A DNA stretch of 64,000 nucleotides from Ranitomeya imitator (Eukaryota): NCBI RefSeq assembly GCF_032444005.1, contig NC_091287.1, positions 504,494,001-504,558,000 of the forward strand, read 5' to 3'. Positions 37,611 to 57,555 of this stretch are shown piece by piece (positions within the stretch are counted from its first letter, which is position 1; each line of letters starts with the position of its first letter). The notes under the pieces were generated by a model. The model was not told the origin of the DNA. It worked only from the letters and a program-made list of their open reading frames with translations, and ran no database searches. Made by a program: the position numbers and the translations under genes.

Positions 37611-38846
37611 GTATAAGCCGACCCGAGTATAAGCCGACCCCCCTAATTTTGCCACAAAAAACTGGGAAAACTTATTGACTCGAGTATAAGCCTAGGGTGG
37701 AAATGCAGCATTTACCGGTGAATTTCAAAAATAAAAATAGATCATTATTTCCCCATAGCTGTGCCATATAGTGCTCTACACCATTCATATTTCCCCATAG
37801 CTGTGCCCCATATAGTGCTCTGCACCGTTCACTGTGCCCCATAGCTGTGCCATATACAGTGCTCTGCACCGTTCACTGTGCCCCCTAGCTGTGCCATATA
37901 CAGTGCTCTGCACCGTTCACTGTGCCCCATAGCTGTGCCATATACGGTGCTCTGCACCGTTCATTGTGCCCCCTAGCTGTGCCATATACGGTGCTCTGCA
38001 CCGTTCGCTTTGCCCCCTAGCTGTGCCTTATACGGTGCTCTGCACCGTTCGCTGTGCCCCCTAGCTGTGCCTTATACGGTGCTCTGCACCGTTCACTGTG
38101 CCCCCTAGCTGTGCCTTATACGGTGCTCTGCACCGTTCACTGTGCCCCATAGATGTGCCATATACGGTGCTCTGCACCGTTCACTGTGCCCCATAGATGC
38201 TCCACATTAATCTGTGCTGCAGCTGCTGCTGCTGCAATAAAAAAAAAAAAAAACATACTCACCTCCCTTGATTGCAGCTCCCGGCGTCTCGTTCCGGCGC
38301 CTCCATCTTCCCGGCGTCTCTGCTCTGACTGATCAGGTAGAGGGCGCCGCGCACACTATATGCGTCATCGCGCCCTCTGCCTGATCAGTCAGAGAGCGCA
38401 GACGCCGGGAAGATGGAGGCGCCGGCCGGGAAGATGGATCGGCGCCCGGCGGCTGGAACGAGGACAGGTGAATATAACATACTCACCTAGTCCTGGCGAT
38501 CCTCGCGCTGTCCCCTCCTGTCTTCGGCGCTGCAGCTTCTTTCTCTATCAGCGGTCACCGGCACCGCTGATTAGAGAAATGAATAAGCGGCTCCGCCCCT
38601 ATGGGAGGTGGAGCCGCTTATTCATTTCTGTAATGAGCGGTCCCACGTGACCGCTGAAGAGGGGAAGAAGCTGCAGCGCCGAAGCCCGTGGGACGGCAGG
38701 GACAGCGCGAGGATCGCTGGGACTAGGTAAGTATACCCCAGCGCCCTCAGCCCCTCACCTGCCGACCCCACCGCTACCGTGACTCGAGTATAAGCCGAGG
38801 GGGGCACTTTCAGCCCTAAAATTTGGGCTGAAAATCTCGGCTTATA
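37611..38846. mobile_element. pogo/Tigger-like non-autonomous element, termini lost in gaps
   Basis: Subterminal repeats ctcgagtataagccga at both ends, finishing ctcggcttata; internal inverted modules at 38290-38425 and 38520-38700. Confidence 0.7.
37755..38200. repeat. 44-bp tandem repeat inside the Tigger-like element
   Basis: ctgtgccatatacggtgctctgcaccgttcactgtgccccctag, ~9-10 copies. Confidence 0.95.
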
Positions 38847-40379: not shown

Positions 40380-41253
40380 TTTCCCATATATTTCCATGCC
40401 CGGTCCTGTAGTTTGGGAGCCCCCGTCCTGGGGCAGGTAACCCCTCTGCGCCTCTTCCGTGCTGCCCCCTCTCTGGGCTGAGTGCCGGCGACCATTGGCT
40501 GCAGCCCTGTGAATGGGAGGCGGTGGTGGGAGGTGCTGCAGCAGCTGCGCGTCCTCCCCGCTCTCAGACTGGAGTAACCGGAGAGATGCCGCGTCCTCCG
40601 ATGTTTTCTGACTTGTGAGCTGTTATTCCCGGCAGCCAGATGTGGCGGATCCCCTGACGCCGGCATCTCTGCACCGCGCGGCTGTCACCGGCTGACAGGA
40701 ATATGAGCGGAGGACGCGCCGGCGACCGGCTTCTTCACGTTTCTGCCACCCGGCTTCTTCCCGTTTCTGCCGCCCGGCTTCTTCACGCTTGTGCCACCCG
40801 GCTTCTTCCCGTTTCTGCCACCCGGCTTCTTCCCGTTTCTGACGCCCGGCTTCTTCCCGTTTCTGCCACCCGGCTTCTTCCCGTTTCTGACGCCCGGCTT
40901 CTTCCCGTTTCTGACGCCCGGCTTCTTCACGCTTGTGCCGCCCGGCTTCTTCACGCTTGTGCCGCCCGGCTTCTTCACGCTTGTGCCGCCCGGCTTCACG
41001 TTTCTGCCGCCCGGCTTCTTCACGTTTCTGCCGCCCGGCTTCTTCACGCTTGTGCCGCGGAAGCCGGTCCTTCTCTGCGCTGCTGCCGGTCCGGGCACCG
41101 CGGCGAGGACGCGCAGTCTTCTCAGTCCTAATGCCGGCCCGGTGGTCGCTCCTGTGTCCGGGGGAGCCGGCGGAGCCCGCCCGGCATGTCCGCTGTGGGA
41201 GCCGTGTGTAGCAGCAGCCACTGTGTAGCCGGGCGGCGACTCTACAGAGGAAC
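40380..41253 (+). promoter_or_regulatory. rims2: CpG-island promoter and 5' UTR of the putative RIM2-beta transcript
   Basis: Sharp rise in GC and CpG; inverted CCAAT box ccATTGGct at 40494-40498; GC-box-like gggaggcggtgg at ~40515; leads to ATG 41254. TSS not determinable. Confidence 0.7.
40726..41058 (+). repeat. 24-bp VNTR (CCCGGCTTCTTCCCGTTTCTGCCA-like), ~14 copies
   Basis: Direct inspection; lies between the promoter motifs and the start codon. Confidence 0.96.
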
Positions 41254-41396: not shown

Positions 41397-42024
41397 GTAT
41401 GTAAGGCGGGCAATGTCGCCCCCCATCTATGTGTGCATTGTGCCCCCTACACATTCCTATAGCGCCAACATATGCCACCGCGTCGTACAAGCACTGCAGA
41501 CACTTATAGATTCCTTTTTTTAACCTTTCAATATATTTTTTTTATTATTGAGGTGGGGGAGGGGATTAGTACATAAAAGACCCCCGCCCCCCCCCCCCCC
41601 CCCCCCAAAAAAAAAAAAAAAAAAAATACAGGGAGACTATAGAAACTATAAGGTATGGAGAGATAAAAATCCGAAATAACGTGGCTCTGCTGCATCCCAC
41701 TTGTGCCCACCGATAGAAATCACATCCAATGGGGGCGACGAGAGGATAAACAAGGGGGGACGTAGCTATTGACCCCACAAGATTGATTGATCAGGTGGGA
41801 TTTGGTGCATTCCATAATGTGTTCACACCATATACTTTTATTGCGCGGAAGTGATTGATGGTTGCCCCTCCGTCGCCCCCTCGCACGCCTTGCTCCTAAG
41901 CGATCCCCCATTAATAAGCAGCGGTCAGGGATTACTTGCAGCTGTGGAGATGCTGCTTCTTGTGCGAAGAAATGCTGGATAGCTCCTACTATGTGCAAGA
42001 CGCAGCAATATCCTCCACGGCTAA

Positions 42025-44103
42025 TCATCCCCTATAGAGGCTGCCATTATCAATCACCCCCTATAGAGGCTGCCATTACTGATCATCCCCCATAGAATCT
42101 GCCATTACCGATCATCCCCTATAGAGGCTGCCATTACTGATCATCCCCTATAGAGACTGCCATTAGCGATCACCCCCTATAGAAGCTGCCATTACCGATC
42201 ACCCCCTATAGAGGCTGCCATTACCGATAATCCCCTATAGAGGCTGCCATTACCGATCACCCCCTATAGAAGCTGTCATTACTGATCATCCCCCATAGAA
42301 TCTGCCATTACCAATCATCCCCTATAGAAGCTGCCACTACCAATCATCCCCTATAGAAGCTGCCATTACCGATCACCCCCTATAGAGGCTGCCATTACCG
42401 ATAATCCCCTATAGAGGCTGCCATTACCGATCACCCCTATAGAAGCTGTCATTACTGATCATCCCCCATAGAATCTGCCATTACCGATCACCCCCTATAG
42501 AGGCTGCCATTACCGATAATCCCCTATAGAGGCTGCCATTACCGATCACCCCCTATAGAAGCTGTCATTACTGATCATCCCCCATAGAATCTGCCATTAC
42601 CAATCATCCCCTATAGAAGCTGCCACTACCAATCATCCCCTATAGAAGCTGCCATTACCGATCACCCCCTATAGAGGCTGCCATTACCGATAATCCCCTA
42701 TAGAGGCTGCCATTACCGATCACCCCCTATAGAAGCTGTCATTACTGATCATCCCCCATAGAATCTGCCATTACCAATCATCCCCTATAGAAGCTGCCAC
42801 TACCAATCATCCCCTATAGAAGCTGCCATTACCGATCACCCCCTATAGAGGCAGCCATTACTGATGATTCCCTATAGAGGCTGCCATTACTGATCATCCC
42901 CTATAGAGGCTGCCATTACCGATCACCCCCTATAGAAGCTGCCATTACCGATCATCCCCTATATAGGCTGCCATTACCGATCATCCTCTATAGAGGATGC
43001 CATTACCGATCATCCTCTATAGAGGCTGCCATTACTGATCATCCCCTATAGAAGCTGCCATTATTGATCATCCCCTATAGAGGCTGCCATTGCCGATCAT
43101 CCTCTATAGAGGCTGCCATTACCGACCATCCCCTATAGAGACTGCCATTACTGTTCATCCCCTATAGAAGCTGCCATTATTGATCATCCCCTATAGAGGC
43201 TGCCATTACTGATCGTCCCCTATAGAAGCTGCCATTATTGATCATCCCCTATAGAGGCTGTCATTACTGATCATCCCCTATAGAAGCTGCCATTATTGTT
43301 CATCCCCTATAGAGGCTGCCATTACTGATCGTCCCCTATAGAGGCTGCCATTGCCGATCGTCCCCTATAGAGGCTGCCATTGCCGATCATCCCCTATAGA
43401 GGCTGCCATTACTGTTCATCCCCTGTAGAGGCTGCCATTACCGATCGTCCCCTATAGAGGCTGCCATTGCCGATCATCCCCTATAGAGGCTGCCATTACT
43501 GTTCATCCCCTGTAGAGGCTGCCATTACCGATCACCCCCTATAGAGGCTGCCATTACCGATCGTCCCCTATAGAGGCTGCCATTACCGATCACCCCCTAT
43601 AGAAGCTGTCATTACTGATCATCCCCCATAGAATCTGCCATTACCAATCATCCCCTATAGAAGCTGCCACTACCAATCATCCCCTATAGAAGCTGCCATT
43701 ACCGATCACCCCCTATAGAGGCAGCCAGTACTGATGATTCCCTATAGAGGCTGCCATTACTGATCATCCCCTATAGAGGCTGCCGTTACCGATCACCCCC
43801 TATAGAAGCTGCCATTACCGATAATCCCCTATAGAGGCTGCCATTACCGATCATCCTCTATAGAGGATGCCATTACCGATCATCCTCTATAGAGGCTGCC
43901 ATTACCGATCACCCCCTATAGAAGCTGCCATTACTGATCATCCCCCATAGAATCTGCCATTACCGATCATCCTCTATAGAGGATGCCATTACCAATCATC
44001 CCCTATAGAAGCTGCCACTACCAATCATCCCCTATAGAAGCTGCCATTACCGATAATCCCCTATAGAGGCTGCCATTACCAATCATCCCCTATAGAAGCT
44101 GCC
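42025..44103. repeat. 29-bp minisatellite (ATCATCCCCTATAGAGGCTGCCATTACCG)n, left part
   Basis: Tandem units with 29-bp period and recurring variant blocks. Confidence 0.98.
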
Positions 44104-46260
44104 AATATTGTACAGTTTCACCTGTCTTTCACTAGGGGGACTTGTCAGGGAGTCACAAAAACACTGAACTTTAGGAAGGCAAAGTTTGACCAGCTTAGAG
44201 ATGCCCTTAATCTGGTAGACTGGGACAATATCCTCAGAAATGAGAATACAGATAATAAATGGGAAATGTTTAAGAACATCCTAAATAGGCAGTGTAAGCG
44301 GTTTATACCTTGTGGGAATAAAAGGACTAGAAATAGGAAAAACCCAATGTGGCTAAACAAAGAAGTAAGACAGGCAATTAACAGTAAAAAGAAAGCATTT
44401 GCACTACTAAAGCAGGATGGCACCATTGAAGCTCTAAAAAACTATAGGGAGAAAAATACTTTATCTAAAAAACTAATTAAAGCTGCCAAAAAGGAAACAG
44501 AGAAGCACATTGCTAAGGAGAGTAAAACTGATCCCAAACTGTTCTTCAACTATATCAATAGTAAAAGAATAAAAACTGAAAATGTAGGCCCCTTAAAAAA
44601 TAGTGAGGAAAGAATGGTTGTAGATGACGAGGAAAAAGCTAACATATTAAACACCGTCTTCTCCACGGTTTTCACGGAAAATGAAATGCTAGGTGAAATC
44701 CCAAGAAACAATGAAAACCCTATATTAAGGGTCACCAATCTAACCCAAGAAGAGGTGCGAAACCGGCTAAATAAGATTAAAATAGATAAATCTCCGGGTC
44801 CGGATGGCATACACCCACGAGTACTAAGAGAACTAAGTAATATAATAGATAAACCATTATTTCTTATTTTTAGTGACTCTATAGCGACAGGGTCTGTTCC
44901 GCAGGACTGGCGCATAGCAAATGTGGTGCCAATATTCAAAAAGGGCTCTAAAAGTGAACCTGGAAATTATAGGCCAGTAAGTCTAACCTCTATTGTTGGT
45001 AAAATATTTGAAGGGTTTCTGAGGGATGTTATTCTGGATTATCTCAATGAGAATAACTGTTTAACTCCATATCAGCATGGGTTTATGAGAAATCGCTCCT
45101 GTCAAACCAATCTAATCAGTTTTTATGAAGAGGTAAGCTATAGGCTGGACCACGGTGAGTCAGTGGACGTGGTATATCTCGATTTATCCAAAGCGTTTGA
45201 TACCGTGCCGCACAAGAGGTTGGTACACAAAATGAGAATGCTTGGTCTGGGGGAAAATGTGTGTAAATGGGTTAGTAACTGGCTTAGTGATAGAAAGCAG
45301 AGGGTGGTTATAAATGGTATAGTCTCTAACTGGGTCGCTGTGACCAGTGGGGTACCGCAGGGGTCAGTATTGGGACCTGTTCTCTTCAACATATTCATTA
45401 ATGATCTGGTAGAAGGTTTACACAGTAAAATATCGATATTTGCAGATGATACAAAACTATGTAAAGCAGTTAATACAAGAGAAGATAGTATTCTGCTACA
45501 GATGGATCTGGATAAGTTGGAAACTTGGGCTGAAAGGTGGCAGATGAGGTTTAACAATGATAAATGTAAGGTTATACACATGGGAAGAAGGAATCAATAT
45601 CACCATTACACACTGAACGGGAAACCACTGGGTAAATCTGACAGGGAGAAGGACTTGGGGATCCTAGTTAATGATAAACTTACCTGGAGCAGCCAGTGCC
45701 AGGCAGCAGCTGCCAAGGCAAACAGGATCATGGGGTGCATTAAAAGAGGTCTGGATACACATGATGAGAGCATTATACTGCCTCTGTACAAATCCCTAGT
45801 TAGACCGCACATGGAGTACTGTGTCCAGTTTTGGGCACCGGTGCTCAGGAAGGATATAATGGAACTAGAGAGAGTACAAAGGAGGGCAACAAAATTAATA
45901 AAGGGGATGCGAGATCTACAATACCCAGATAGATTAGCGAAATTAGGATTATTTAGTCTAGAAAAAAGACGACTGAGGGGCGATCTAATAACCATGTATA
46001 AGTATATAAGGGGACAATACAAATATCTCGCTGAGGATCTGTTTATACCAAGGAAGGTGACGGGCACAAGGGGGCATTCTTTGCGTCTGGAGGAGAGAAG
46101 GTTTTTCCACCAACGTAGAAGAGGATTCTTTACTGTTAGGGCAGTGAGTATCTGGAATTGCTTGCCTGAGGAGGTGGTGATGGCGAACTCAGTCGAGGGG
46201 TTCAAGAGAGGCCTGGATGTCTTCCTGGAGCAGAACAATATTGTATCATACAATTATTAG
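44104..46260 (+). CDS. CR1 ORF2 reverse transcriptase (N-terminally truncated, uninterrupted)
   Basis: RT motifs NYRPVSLTS, QHGF, YLDLSKAFDTVPH, SGVPQGSVLGP, IFADD; frame open upstream of the M at 44266 back to 44104. Confidence 0.93.
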   Translation, partial: NIVQFHLSFTRGTCQGVTKTLNFRKAKFDQLRDALNLVDWDNILRNENTDNKWEMFKNILNRQCKRFIPCGNKRTRNRKNPMWLNKEVRQAINSKKKAFALLKQDGTIEALKNYREKNTLSKKLIKAAKKETEKHIAKESKTDPKLFFNYINSKRIKTENVGPLKNSEERMVVDDEEKANILNTVFSTVFTENEMLGEIPRNNENPILRVTNLTQEEVRNRLNKIKIDKSPGPDGIHPRVLRELSNIIDKPLFLIFSDSIATGSVPQDWRIANVVPIFKKGSKSEPGNYRPVSLTSIVGKIFEGFLRDVILDYLNENNCLTPYQHGFMRNRSCQTNLISFYEEVSYRLDHGESVDVVYLDLSKAFDTVPHKRLVHKMRMLGLGENVCKWVSNWLSDRKQRVVINGIVSNWVAVTSGVPQGSVLGPVLFNIFINDLVEGLHSKISIFADDTKLCKAVNTREDSILLQMDLDKLETWAERWQMRFNNDKCKVIHMGRRNQYHHYTLNGKPLGKSDREKDLGILVNDKLTWSSQCQAAAAKANRIMGCIKRGLDTHDESIILPLYKSLVRPHMEYCVQFWAPVLRKDIMELERVQRRATKLIKGMRDLQYPDRLAKLGLFSLEKRRLRGDLITMYKYIRGQYKYLAEDLFIPRKVTGTRGHSLRLEERRFFHQRRRGFFTVRAVSIWNCLPEEVVMANSVEGFKRGLDVFLEQNNIVSYNY

Positions 46261-55540: not shown

Positions 55541-56064
55541 CTCGTCATCTACTTTGTGTTCTCTTTATGGTAATAAATATCTGATAATTCCATTGTATTT
55601 AAATTATTTTTCTCTTTTGCATCTTCTAAAATACAAGAAATAGGGCCTGCATTTTGTTTACAAAACAGCGTCACACGTGTCCTCTGGCTGGGTCTGGTAT
55701 TGCAGTTAATTTCATTTAAGCTATGAGGGTCTGAGTGACTCCAGCCTTGAGAGACTTTGTTCGATCCTGAACTGACATAGCATAAATGTGTCGCCAATGT
55801 GGTAACAACTACACAAATACTACTGAATGGTTCTTTAAGGGATTTATCAGAATTTGCATGTGGTCGACTGATGCTGATAGTTTTATCTGTTACACGGCAC
55901 CTGCATGTAAGGCCTCTTTCACACGTCCAGGTAATTCTGGTACCGGAGAAATCGGTACCGGAAGTGTCCGTGTGCTCACTTAGCACATCAGTGTGGCACA
56001 CGTGCGGCAGCCGTGTGCCGACTGAGGACCACACGGACCGTGCAGGAGACAGCGCTACAGTTAA

Positions 56065-56091
56065 GCGCTGTCCCCTGCATGCGGTGCTGAA
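56065..56091 (-). promoter_or_regulatory. Non-canonical REST/NRSF RE1 site, 9-bp spacer
   Basis: Minus strand TTCAGCACC-gcatgcagg-GGACAGCGC; both half-sites perfect. Confidence 0.55.
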
Positions 56092-56588
56092 GCCGGTATT
56101 CATCCCTTCTTCCCAGCTGGAAAGAAGGAATGAAAAATCTTTTTTTTCTCTTTTCTCTTAAAAATAAATTTTGCGCGTTCCCTCCCGCATCCCATCCCCT
56201 GTGCGCCCCCCCCCCCCCACTTGCCAGGAAATACTCACCGACACCCAGCTCCAGCGATGTCTCCTCTCAGCGCCAGCAGCAGGCCCTGTGTGAGCGGTCA
56301 CGTGGTCCCGCTCATTACAGTGAGGAATATGCACATATTCCTCACTGTAATGAGCGGGACCACGTGACCGCTCACACAGCACAGGCTGCAGCCGCTGAGA
56401 GGAGACATCGCTGGAGCTGGGTGTCGGTATTTCCTGGCAAGCGGGGGGGGGGGGCGCACAGGGGATGAGGGGATGGGAGGCGGGAGGGGATGCACAAACT
56501 TTATTTGTAAGGGGAAAGGGAAAAAAAAAAAGATTATTCATTCCTTCTCTCCAGCGAACGCTGCTGGGAAGAAGGGATGAATTCCGGC

Positions 56589-56614
56589 TTCAGCACCACG
56601 GGGGGGGACAGCGC
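56589..56614 (+). promoter_or_regulatory. Non-canonical REST/NRSF RE1 site, 8-bp spacer
   Basis: TTCAGCACC-acgggggg-GGACAGCGC; both half-sites perfect. Confidence 0.55.
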
Positions 56615-57555
56615 TTACTGTAGCGCTGTCTCTCCTGTGGGCGGTACGTGCACACGGAGGAGAGTACACACTGTTCTCCGTGTGCACGTGTTCGGGACGC
56701 TTTGTGGACCGTGCTGCCGGAGAAAAACGGACATGTCTCCGACACATGGTCCGTGAAAACACGGTGACATGTGCATAGACCCATTCATTTGAATGGGTTT
56801 ACGTGTGTCAATGTCTCCGGTACGTGAGAAAACTGTCAGTACACGTACCGGAGAAACTGACATGTGAAAGAGGCCTAAGGGTTCCATTCCTTTGTGTATA
56901 CCGCTCATGGTTACAGACTAATAACAAAGCTTGTGCTGTCAGACTCTGCAGTCAGGCTACAAAGCTAGAAACATTCTGGTTGTGGTTTCACCCTCACAGG
57001 CTCCATCATAGGTGTCCTTGAGAAAGCTCATCAATATCAGATCTGTGATGGTTCGACACCCAAACCCCACACCAGTCATCTGCTATTAGATCTGCTGTCA
57101 GCCTGATATAAATATACAGCACACCTCTGGTCAGTCTGTAGAGTCGGCTGCCATGCACTGCGGATAAGCTCCCATTGAAGAGACTGCGGCCCGATCTGCA
57201 GTTCTCAGCAGGGGCCACTATACAATAAGCAGGGCTGTGCTGTTCATCTCTATTCACTGTTTATATCCAACAGCCAATTAAGTCAAGAACAGCTGGTAAG
57301 TGACGATGTGTCGGACCACCGCCTATCTATCGGACTACAATAGGTCATCAATATTATTTGCTCAGACAACCCCCTTTAAAGTCACACCTCTGATGGGGTC
57401 AGTGACGTTGAAAGTAGAACCAGAACGTTCAAGTCTGTATAGTCTCACTAGGACCAAAGAGAAACTTCAGTTGACATGAGAGCAGTTTACACAAATCAAT
57501 AGCTTTTTTTTTTCCTTTTTAATGAACATCCTTGATCTCACCTATCATGTGTTAC

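What the first reader, a model, noticed from the sequence alone, without database searches (positions are those of the whole stretch)
56065..56614. A MITE carries two long-spacer REST/RE1 elements into a neuronal gene
Seen: both arms of the Harbinger-like MITE contain perfect RE1 half-sites (TTCAGCACC and GGACAGCGC) in the right order, separated by 9 and 8 nt; the spacers differ between arms while the half-sites are invariant. Established: REST binds canonical 2-nt-spacer sites and also non-canonical sites with longer spacers, and silences synaptic genes. Inference: this MITE family could spread REST sites genome-wide and here sits ~15 kb downstream of the RIM2-beta promoter.
Basis: partly seen in the sequence, partly recalled or inferred. 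Interest (0 to 1): 0.7.

Follow-up and report, generated by a model that had tools for sequence, protein, structure and literature searches.

The report
Frog transposon carrying REST-like silencer motifs
A very abundant poison-frog jumping-gene fragment, inserted here only after two sister species split, carries at both tips of its inner hairpin a near-perfect long-spacer version of the motif bound by the neuronal-gene silencer REST; it is a good but untested candidate REST site, not a shown regulator of the host gene.

Summary
TTCAGCACC and GGACAGCGCT lie in RE1 order at 56064-56091 (minus strand, 9-nt spacer) and 56589-56615 (plus strand, 8-nt spacer). These are the only such pairs in the window, where about 1e-5 are expected by chance. 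Spacers of 8 and 9 bp are the only non-canonical spacings that silence in a human reporter screen (PMC9903721).

The anatomy needs revising. The unit that inserted is a 965-bp Harbinger-type MITE (55911-56875) with a TAA target duplication. A contig from a close relative shows the clean empty site. The RE1-like sites sit at the tips of a 552-bp fold-back module nested at its centre.

The tip module is very high-copy in this species and its relative, and nearly absent in a more distant poison frog.

Within this copy the half-sites are not measurably better conserved than neighbouring sequence. The spacer is simply hypervariable: it carries CpG-type changes and a G-run.

I could obtain no other family copies, so no family consensus was built. 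There are no REST binding data.

Verdict: a sequence-competent, transposon-borne atypical RE1 pair that is probably a young neutral passenger. It is a new member of a known kind (transposon-borne RE1s). Regulation of RIMS2 is unsupported. The scan has not noted this motif on other DNA.

The parts
55908..55910 (.). Left copy of the TAA target-site duplication of the outer MITE
   Evidence: sequence. In one search (tables 5, 5c, 8), X6 record 25 joins ...CCTGCATG directly to TAAGGGTTCC, skipping the element, so the relative has a single TAA.
55911..56875 (.). Outer 965-bp Harbinger/PIF-type MITE, the unit that inserted here. Terminal inverted repeats are 55911-55927 and 56859-56875 (GGCCTCTTTCACAC...). 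A subterminal direct repeat GGTACCGGAGAAA occurs four times.
   Evidence: I9, D1; summed contig depth is 1e4-4e5 against 5-22 in the flanks. About 100 contigs per run end at 56876/56878 and continue into unrelated AT-rich sequence, in all four runs.
56876..56878 (.). Right copy of the TAA target-site duplication
56046..56060 (.). Left stem of the outer element's central hairpin (GAGACAGCGCTACAG). It pairs with 56618-56632. With the inner module removed, the site reads as a 33-nt near-palindrome around TTA.
   Evidence: (I10, I11, I15).
56064..56615 (.). Inner 552-bp fold-back module. Its arms differ by 8.2% substitutions and 8 indel events. It is flanked by TTA/TTA, or by TA/TA with perfect AGCGCTGTCC tips. 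It is built of tip cassettes (56064-56139 and 56540-56615), T/C-rich and C-run segments, and a core palindrome.
   Evidence: DNA fold of -314 kcal/mol, z = -37.6; the segments differ 100-fold in abundance.
56064..56091 (-). RE1-like site, left arm: TTCAGCACC, 9-nt spacer GCATGCAGG, GGACAGCGCT
56589..56615 (+). RE1-like site, right arm: TTCAGCACC, 8-nt spacer ACGGGGGG, GGACAGCGCT. With six G removed it equals the 21-bp consensus at 20 of 21 positions.
   Evidence: consensus from PMC3529185.
56231..56430 (.). Core palindrome, centred at 56332/56333. It belongs to an older family that is also abundant in the more distant frog and is homologous to the palindrome at 38479-38734. It carries CACGTG boxes, and its left end reads ATACTCACC (the mirror motif in the right arm has a 4-nt deletion).
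   Evidence: alignment; bin 56302-56355 has depth 1.4e5 in X18, while the tips have 233.
56618..56632 (.). Right stem of the outer element's central hairpin (CTGTAGCGCTGTCTC)
   Evidence: (I10).

Best explanation
A 965-bp non-coding Harbinger-type MITE (TAA duplication) jumped into this intron in the Ranitomeya imitator lineage after its split from a close relative. It arrived as a ready-made composite. Nested at its centre is a 552-bp fold-back module whose two tips each carry an atypically spaced RE1 (perfect left half, 9/10 right half, spacers of 9 and 8 bp). The motif is a trait of a very high-copy tip cassette shared by the two close species, not something that evolved at this locus.

By the rule measured in human cells, such sites should bind REST. 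In that model the two zinc-finger groups sit on the half-sites and finger 6 is looped out across the 8-9 bp gap, giving weak silencing. Frog REST most likely can bind them on naked DNA (inferred).

At this locus the copy is most likely a young, neutral passenger with no shown effect on the host gene. The spacer difference between the arms reflects CpG decay and G-run slippage, not selection on the half-sites.

Shown: the motif, the anatomy, the insertion, the abundance. Inferred: REST binding. Unsupported: regulation of the gene.
For: Motif and chance. The 8/9-bp rule and the zinc-finger-6 model: PMC9903721. The same consensus works in zebrafish in a REST-dependent way: PMC3529185. Empty site in the relative and the TAA duplication: X6 record 25 (depth 22 = single copy, skips 55888-56876). 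Abundance: at place 56598, depth is 131,868 (X1), 89,691 (X2) and 140,459 (X6) against flanks of 5-22, and only 167 in X18. No best-supported alternative letter is listed inside either site, whereas 56576 is listed. The listed spacer length variants (+G, +T, an ATGT variant) all give 9 nt (tables 3, 4, 7). The arms differ by 8.2% substitutions against 5.1% flank divergence between the two species, so the palindrome predates the insertion. Half-sites 0/19 against about 5 events in 70 neighbouring columns; spacer 5/9, of which 3 are CpG-to-CpA type. Transposon-borne RE1s that bind REST are known (PMC1557810; PMC4777549).
Against: There are no binding, chromatin or expression data for any frog. 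One search hid 136 of 176 variant rows, so per-position conservation across the family is not established, and no family consensus could be built. Consensus-level RE1 look-alikes in human ERV class I do not bind REST (PMC1557810). Thousands of copies would far exceed the usual number of REST sites (about 2,000 characterised in mammals, PMC4777549), so most copies are probably not occupied. The contig depth used for abundance is explicitly not a copy number.
Confidence: 0.55

Rival explanations
1. Chance resemblance. The tip sequence is simply the terminal inverted repeat or protein-binding end of a fold-back transposon. It is kept because transposition or hairpin pairing needs it, and REST does not bind it usefully in vitro or in vivo.
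For: The motif sits at the very tip of the module, where transposon ends are constrained anyway. The same GACAGCGCT word recurs in the outer element's central hairpin, which suggests a structural or transposition role (I10, I11, I15). The neighbouring tip sequence is as conserved as the half-sites. About 1.4 such pairs are expected by chance per genome, and any that lands in an amplifying family gets multiplied. The core of the same element also carries CACGTG boxes, so motif look-alikes are easy to find in it. hERV class I RE1 look-alikes do not bind REST.
Against: An 18/19 match with exactly the two functional spacings is far tighter than the degenerate-consensus matches that failed in hERV. 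The chance of such a match in a few Mb of distinct repeat sequence is about 1e-3 under a random model (scaled). REST recognition of this consensus is conserved from fish to human.
Confidence: 0.25
2. The copies are working REST silencers. This one damps the internal RIMS2 promoter outside neurons, and the family has rewired the REST regulon in Ranitomeya.
For: Sequence competence under the human 8/9-bp rule. Two sites lie about 500 bp apart. Duplicated RE1s in LINE2, Alu and L1 bind REST and sit near genes with REST-target functions.
Against: The insertion is absent in the close relative, so nothing shows constraint at this locus. 8/9-bp sites are weaker than canonical ones. The mariner long-spacer NRSE binds NRSF but is dispensable for silencing. 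The copy number is very high. Neither expression data nor a canonical RE1 in the window mark this gene as REST-controlled here.
Confidence: 0.12
3. The relevant property is the hairpin, not the motif. If transcribed within the intron, the 587-nt near-perfect palindrome forms long double-stranded RNA and feeds small-RNA pathways. As DNA it could form a cruciform that is fragile or prone to deletion.
For: Predicted fold of -314 kcal/mol against -102 for shuffles, z = -37.6. Many variant joints and deletions within the family (table 5).
Against: No RNA run holds the stretch. No Rfam family matches. This reading does not explain the RE1-like motif and is compatible with the other explanations.
Confidence: 0.08

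Closest known systems
Atypically spaced (non-canonical) RE1/NRSE sites of human REST (Mouri et al. 2022, PMC9903721; Johnson et al. 2007; Tang et al. 2021)
   Same: Left and right half-sites in the canonical order and orientation, separated by 8 or 9 bp instead of 2. Both half-sites are close to the consensus.
   Different: Those sites are defined by ChIP-seq occupancy and reporter repression in human cells. Here only the sequence is known, in a frog, on a repeat with thousands of copies.
Transposon-mediated RE1 duplication in mammals (LINE2, Alu, L1; Johnson et al. 2006, PMC1557810)
   Same: A REST motif is embedded in a repeat family and is thereby copied to many loci, including introns of neuronal genes.
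   Different: Those are retrotransposons with canonical 21-bp sites and were shown to bind by EMSA and ChIP. This is a DNA-transposon MITE module with long-spacer sites at its inverted-repeat tips, untested.
Long-spacer NRSE inside mariner transposase genes (Bire et al. 2016, PMC4777549)
   Same: A DNA transposon carrying a non-canonical NRSE with a long (10-bp) spacer, which bound human and fugu NRSF in EMSA.
   Different: That motif lies in coding sequence, constrained by a conserved peptide, and was not needed for silencing. Here it lies in non-coding tips with 8/9-bp spacers.
PIF/Harbinger-derived (Tourist-like) MITEs
   Same: 3-bp TAA target duplication, short terminal inverted repeats, no coding capacity, very high copy number, insertion polymorphic between close species.
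   Different: It carries a nested fold-back module. No link to an autonomous Harbinger of this genome was tested here.
hERV class I RE1-like motifs (Bruce et al. 2004; Johnson et al. 2006)
   Same: A repeat family whose sequence matches an RE1 consensus.
   Different: Those match only a degenerate consensus, score below the matrix cutoff and do not bind REST. The frog sites match the high-information consensus at 18 of 19 half-site positions.

Membership tests
Atypically spaced RE1 (REST site) | Left half-site matching positions 1-9 of the REST motif (TTCAGCACC) | tested here: met
   9/9 in both arms.
Atypically spaced RE1 (REST site) | Right half-site matching positions 12-21 (GGACAGCGCC) | tested here: met
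   9/10 in both arms; the last base is T, not C.
Atypically spaced RE1 (REST site) | Half-sites in canonical order and orientation with an 8- or 9-bp spacer | tested here: met
   Spacers are 9 nt (56074-56082) and 8 nt (56598-56605). The rule is from PMC9903721.
Atypically spaced RE1 (REST site) | Occupied by REST (ChIP, CUT&RUN or EMSA) | not testable with these tools
   No frog REST binding data are available.
Atypically spaced RE1 (REST site) | Represses a linked promoter in a REST-dependent way | not testable with these tools
   Needs a reporter assay.
PIF/Harbinger-type MITE (outer element 55911-56875) | 3-bp TWA target-site duplication, with an empty site elsewhere | tested here: met
   TAA at 55908-55910 and 56876-56878. 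The single-copy contig of organism B has one TAA and no element.
PIF/Harbinger-type MITE (outer element 55911-56875) | Terminal inverted repeats, no coding capacity, many copies | tested here: met
   I9, 18 nt at 94%. The two module ORFs that were searched have no relatives. Depth is 1e4-4e5 against 5-22 in the flanks, and family ends pile up at 56876 in four runs.
PIF/Harbinger-type MITE (outer element 55911-56875) | Ends shared with an autonomous Harbinger of the same genome | not tested
Independent MITE (inner module 56064-56615) | Its own target-site duplication, and copies in unrelated contexts | tested here: inconclusive
   The flanks fit TTA/TTA or TA/TA. The tip cassette differs from its neighbours in abundance and species range. 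No copy in another context could be read.
Transposon-dispersed transcription-factor sites | The motif is part of the family consensus and is kept in many copies | tested here: inconclusive
   No best-supported alternative letter is listed inside either site, and the listed length variants stay at 8-9 nt. However, 136 variant rows were hidden and no alignment of copies could be made.
Exapted cis-regulatory element of the host gene | Orthologous conservation under constraint | tested here: not met
   The whole element is absent at the orthologous site of the close relative.

The most novel reading that the evidence does not exclude
The tip cassette is a true REST-recruiting module. A DNA-transposon family has sown thousands of working 8/9-bp-spacer RE1 silencers through Ranitomeya genomes within the last few million years. 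This would create species-specific REST targets such as this synaptic gene, or a genome-wide sink that titrates REST.
Probability: 0.12. Interest if true: 0.75.

Novelty: new member of a known kind. Interest (0 to 1): 0.42.

Why it matters
Transposon-borne REST sites are documented in mammals for retrotransposons. A young, very abundant amphibian DNA-transposon module carrying near-consensus half-sites at exactly the two functional non-canonical spacings would be a natural experiment. Thousands of near-identical sites with 8- or 9-bp spacers, and presence/absence differences between sister species, would let one test how far sequence alone predicts REST occupancy and silencing, and whether transposons rewire a neuronal repressor network outside mammals. 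As it stands it is a sequence-level prediction. The copy in this gene shows no sign of having been co-opted.

Tried and rejected
Attempts to obtain more family copies for a consensus all failed.
- No second copy of the tips is in the window.
- A viral-contig scan with a subterminal anchor found nothing.
- The metagenome scan gave 5 hits, all GC-rich bacterial chance matches.
- Searching element ORFs as if they were proteins (52 aa and 127 aa) gave nothing.
- I tried to fetch other stretches of this frog's genome through its annotated LINE proteins. These were found, but no DNA was returned because the assembly file is too large.
- Earlier-findings look-ups by sequence and by words were blank.

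Other results.
- Rfam gave no match.
- No canonical RE1 with up to 3 mismatches exists in the window.
- Gene identity was not re-tested.

Rejected readings.
- Assembly artefact: the arms differ by 8% plus indels, and independent contigs cover both junctions.
- 'Half-sites more conserved than neighbours' as evidence of selection: not significant once the 9-nt indel counts as one event.
- The whole-window repeat call only found a minisatellite.

Full report
OBSERVATION. On the plus strand the right arm reads TTCAGCACC (56589-56597), ACGGGGGG (56598-56605), GGACAGCGCT (56606-56615). On the minus strand the left arm reads TTCAGCACC (56091-56083), GCATGCAGG (56082-56074), GGACAGCGCT (56073-56064). 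Against the canonical 21-bp site TTCAGCACC-AC-GGACAGCGCC, as printed in PMC3529185, both sites score 9/9 on the left half and 9/10 on the right half. A scan allowing 1 left and 2 right mismatches and any gap from 0 to 30 found only these two pairs in 64 kb. No dinucleotide shuffle gave any. The analytic expectation is 1.3e-5 per window, about 0.01 for the 755 windows so far noted in this genome, and about 1.4 for a 6.8-Gb genome. The two sites are mirror copies of one inverted repeat, so they count as one event. There is no canonical RE1 with up to three mismatches anywhere in the window.

ANATOMY.

Outer element. Laying contigs of four public runs on 55600-57200 showed single-copy depth in the flanks: 5-8 in the two runs of organism A, 22 in organism B, and 4.6 in organism E. 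One single-copy contig of organism B (record 25, 807 nt) runs from the left flank straight into the right flank, skipping 55888-56876. Once its 23 bridging letters are aligned, organism B reads ...CCTGCATG-TAA-GGGTTCC. The window reads ...CCTGCATG-TAA-[GGCCTCTTTCACAC...GTGAAAGAGGCC]-TAA-GGGTTCC. The inserted unit is therefore 55911-56875 (965 bp). It has a TAA target duplication and 17-18-nt terminal inverted repeats (I9), which is the signature of a PIF/Harbinger-type MITE. In all four runs about a hundred contigs end at 56876/56878 and continue into unrelated AT-rich sequence, which confirms the family terminus.

Inner module. At the centre of the outer element lies a hairpin, GAGACAGCGCTACAG-TTA-CTGTAGCGCTGTCTC. 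The 552-bp module 56064-56615 sits in its loop. It is flanked by TTA/TTA, or equally well by TA/TA with perfect AGCGCTGTCC tips. The whole 56046-56632 stretch is a palindrome. As single-stranded DNA it folds at -314 kcal/mol against -102 for shuffles.

Mosaic structure of the module. The core (about 56231-56430) is homologous to another palindrome at 38479-38734, and it is abundant even in organism E (depth 1.4e5). The tip cassettes that carry the RE1-like sites are abundant in organisms A and B. At place 56598 the depth is 131,868 (X1), 89,691 (X2) and 140,459 (X6). They are almost absent in organism E (167). The tool warns that summed contig depth is not a copy number, so I read this only as 'thousands of copies in the two close species, few in the distant one'.

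AGE. The flanks of organisms A and B differ at 31 of 610 positions (5.1%). The two arms of the module differ by 8.2% substitutions plus 8 indel events. The palindrome is therefore older than the insertion, and the composite arrived as one ready-made unit, moved by its outer ends. The alternative, a precise loss in organism B, cannot be excluded but leaves no footprint. The species is Ranitomeya imitator: a LINE reverse-transcriptase ORF at 44266-46260 is 98% identical to proteins annotated in that species, in line with earlier notes.

HALF-SITES VERSUS SPACER. Within this copy the half-sites show 0 differences in 19 columns. The neighbouring tip sequence is nearly as clean: three substitutions and one 9-nt indel in the 60 columns inside, and one indel in the 18 columns outside. 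The raw Fisher test gives p = 0.066 with every indel column counted. With indels counted as single events (about 5 events in 70 columns) it is clearly not significant.

What stands out is the spacer: 5 differences in 9 columns against 13 in 97 flanking columns (p = 0.007). Three of the five are CpG-to-CpA type changes, and the right arm has an eight-G run. Hypermutable CpGs and slippage are enough to explain the contrast.

Across the family, one search lists no best-supported alternative letter inside either site, while it does list 56576 just inside the right site. The listed length variants are all +1: a G after 56599 (4.6% of depth in X1, 21% in X6) and a T after 56600 (1-8%). Each turns the 8-nt spacer into 9. 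A subfamily in organism B (21 contigs) reads ...CAGCACC-ATGT before 56601, which again gives 9 nt. This is suggestive of a family trait kept at 8-9 nt. It is not proof, because 136 of 176 variant rows and 22 indel rows were not shown, and one copy lacks the right half altogether (joint 56009-56077).

WHAT THE LITERATURE SAYS.
- A genome-wide reporter screen found that non-canonical REST motifs silence only when both half-sites keep the canonical order and are spaced by 8 or 9 bp. Such sites are weaker than 2-bp sites. This agrees with ChIP-seq enrichments and with a model in which zinc finger 6 is unbound and stretched across the gap (PMC9903721).
- The same consensus silences transgenes in zebrafish in a REST-dependent way (PMC3529185). 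Human and fugu NRSF bind the same probes (PMC4777549). Recognition by frog REST is therefore a fair inference.
- Transposon-borne RE1s are known. LINE2, Alu and L1 copies bind REST in EMSA and ChIP, whereas hERV class I look-alikes do not (PMC1557810).
- Mariner transposase genes hold a 10-bp-spacer NRSE that binds NRSF but is not needed for silencing (PMC4777549).
- I found no report of RE1 motifs in MITEs or in amphibian repeats.

MECHANISM AND ODDS. Most likely (0.55) this is a sequence-competent atypical RE1 pair carried passively by a composite Harbinger MITE. It would bind REST on naked DNA, but this copy is a young neutral insertion. A chance resemblance in a transposon end with no useful REST binding gets 0.25. 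A working silencer of the host gene or a rewired regulon gets 0.12. The hairpin as the functional feature (double-stranded RNA or cruciform) gets 0.08, and it is compatible with the others. I see no benefit to a promoter-less MITE from recruiting REST, which favours chance or capture of a host site over adaptation.

LIMITS. No other copy of the tip cassette could be read. The viral, metagenome, ORF-as-protein and encoding-contig routes all failed. The sequencing-run look-up and the read-laying run were single-use, so neither could be repeated with other settings. No RNA run holds the stretch. Runs of N (from 38848) were left as they are.

VERDICT. This is a new member of a known kind, of moderate interest, and it needs a family-wide alignment and a REST binding test.

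Noticed in passing
window 42024-44104: A 29-bp minisatellite, about 72 copies at 88% identity (unit ATCATCCCCTATAGAGGCTGCCATTACCG), just downstream of the putative internal first exon.
   Followed up: partly
window 38479-38734 (and a second small palindrome at 38294-38425): A palindromic element homologous to the core of the focal module (about 68% column identity), next to another hairpin element and an N gap. It shows that the core is an independent, older fold-back family.
   Followed up: partly
window 56231-56239; 38479-38490 and 38723-38734: The ends of the core palindromes read ATACT(C/T)ACCT inward. That equals the first ten bases of U1 snRNA and is the complement of the 5' splice-site consensus, so outward-facing AG|GTAAGTAT or G|GTGAGTAT donor-like sites flank the element. 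In the focal copy the mirror motif in the right arm is broken by a 4-nt deletion. Rfam gave no U1 match. The meaning is unknown.
   Followed up: no
window about 56299-56304 and 56361-56366; also 38645-38650: Perfect CACGTG boxes (GGTCACGTGG) are conserved between the focal core and the 38.6-kb element. This is another transcription-factor-like word in the same repeat, and a reminder of the look-elsewhere effect.
   Followed up: no
window 55938-55951, 56712-56725, 56818-56831, 56843-56856: Four copies of GGTACCGGAGAAA-like words in the subterminal parts of the outer MITE. They are candidate binding sites for the Harbinger DNA-binding partner protein.
   Followed up: no
window 44266-46260 (+): A 664-residue ORF with a reverse-transcriptase domain (RVT_1, E = 7e-35), 98% identical to proteins annotated in Ranitomeya imitator. 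It is a young LINE fragment in the same intron.
   Followed up: partly
window 55654-55707 and 57004-57057: Two short flank segments have contig depth in the hundreds to about 1,200 in all four runs, so they are small pieces of other repeats beside the MITE.
   Followed up: no
window 40700-41230: Long ORFs on both strands with a repeating KREEAGR / PGFFPFL pattern. This is a GC-rich tandem repeat immediately upstream of the putative first exon.
   Followed up: no
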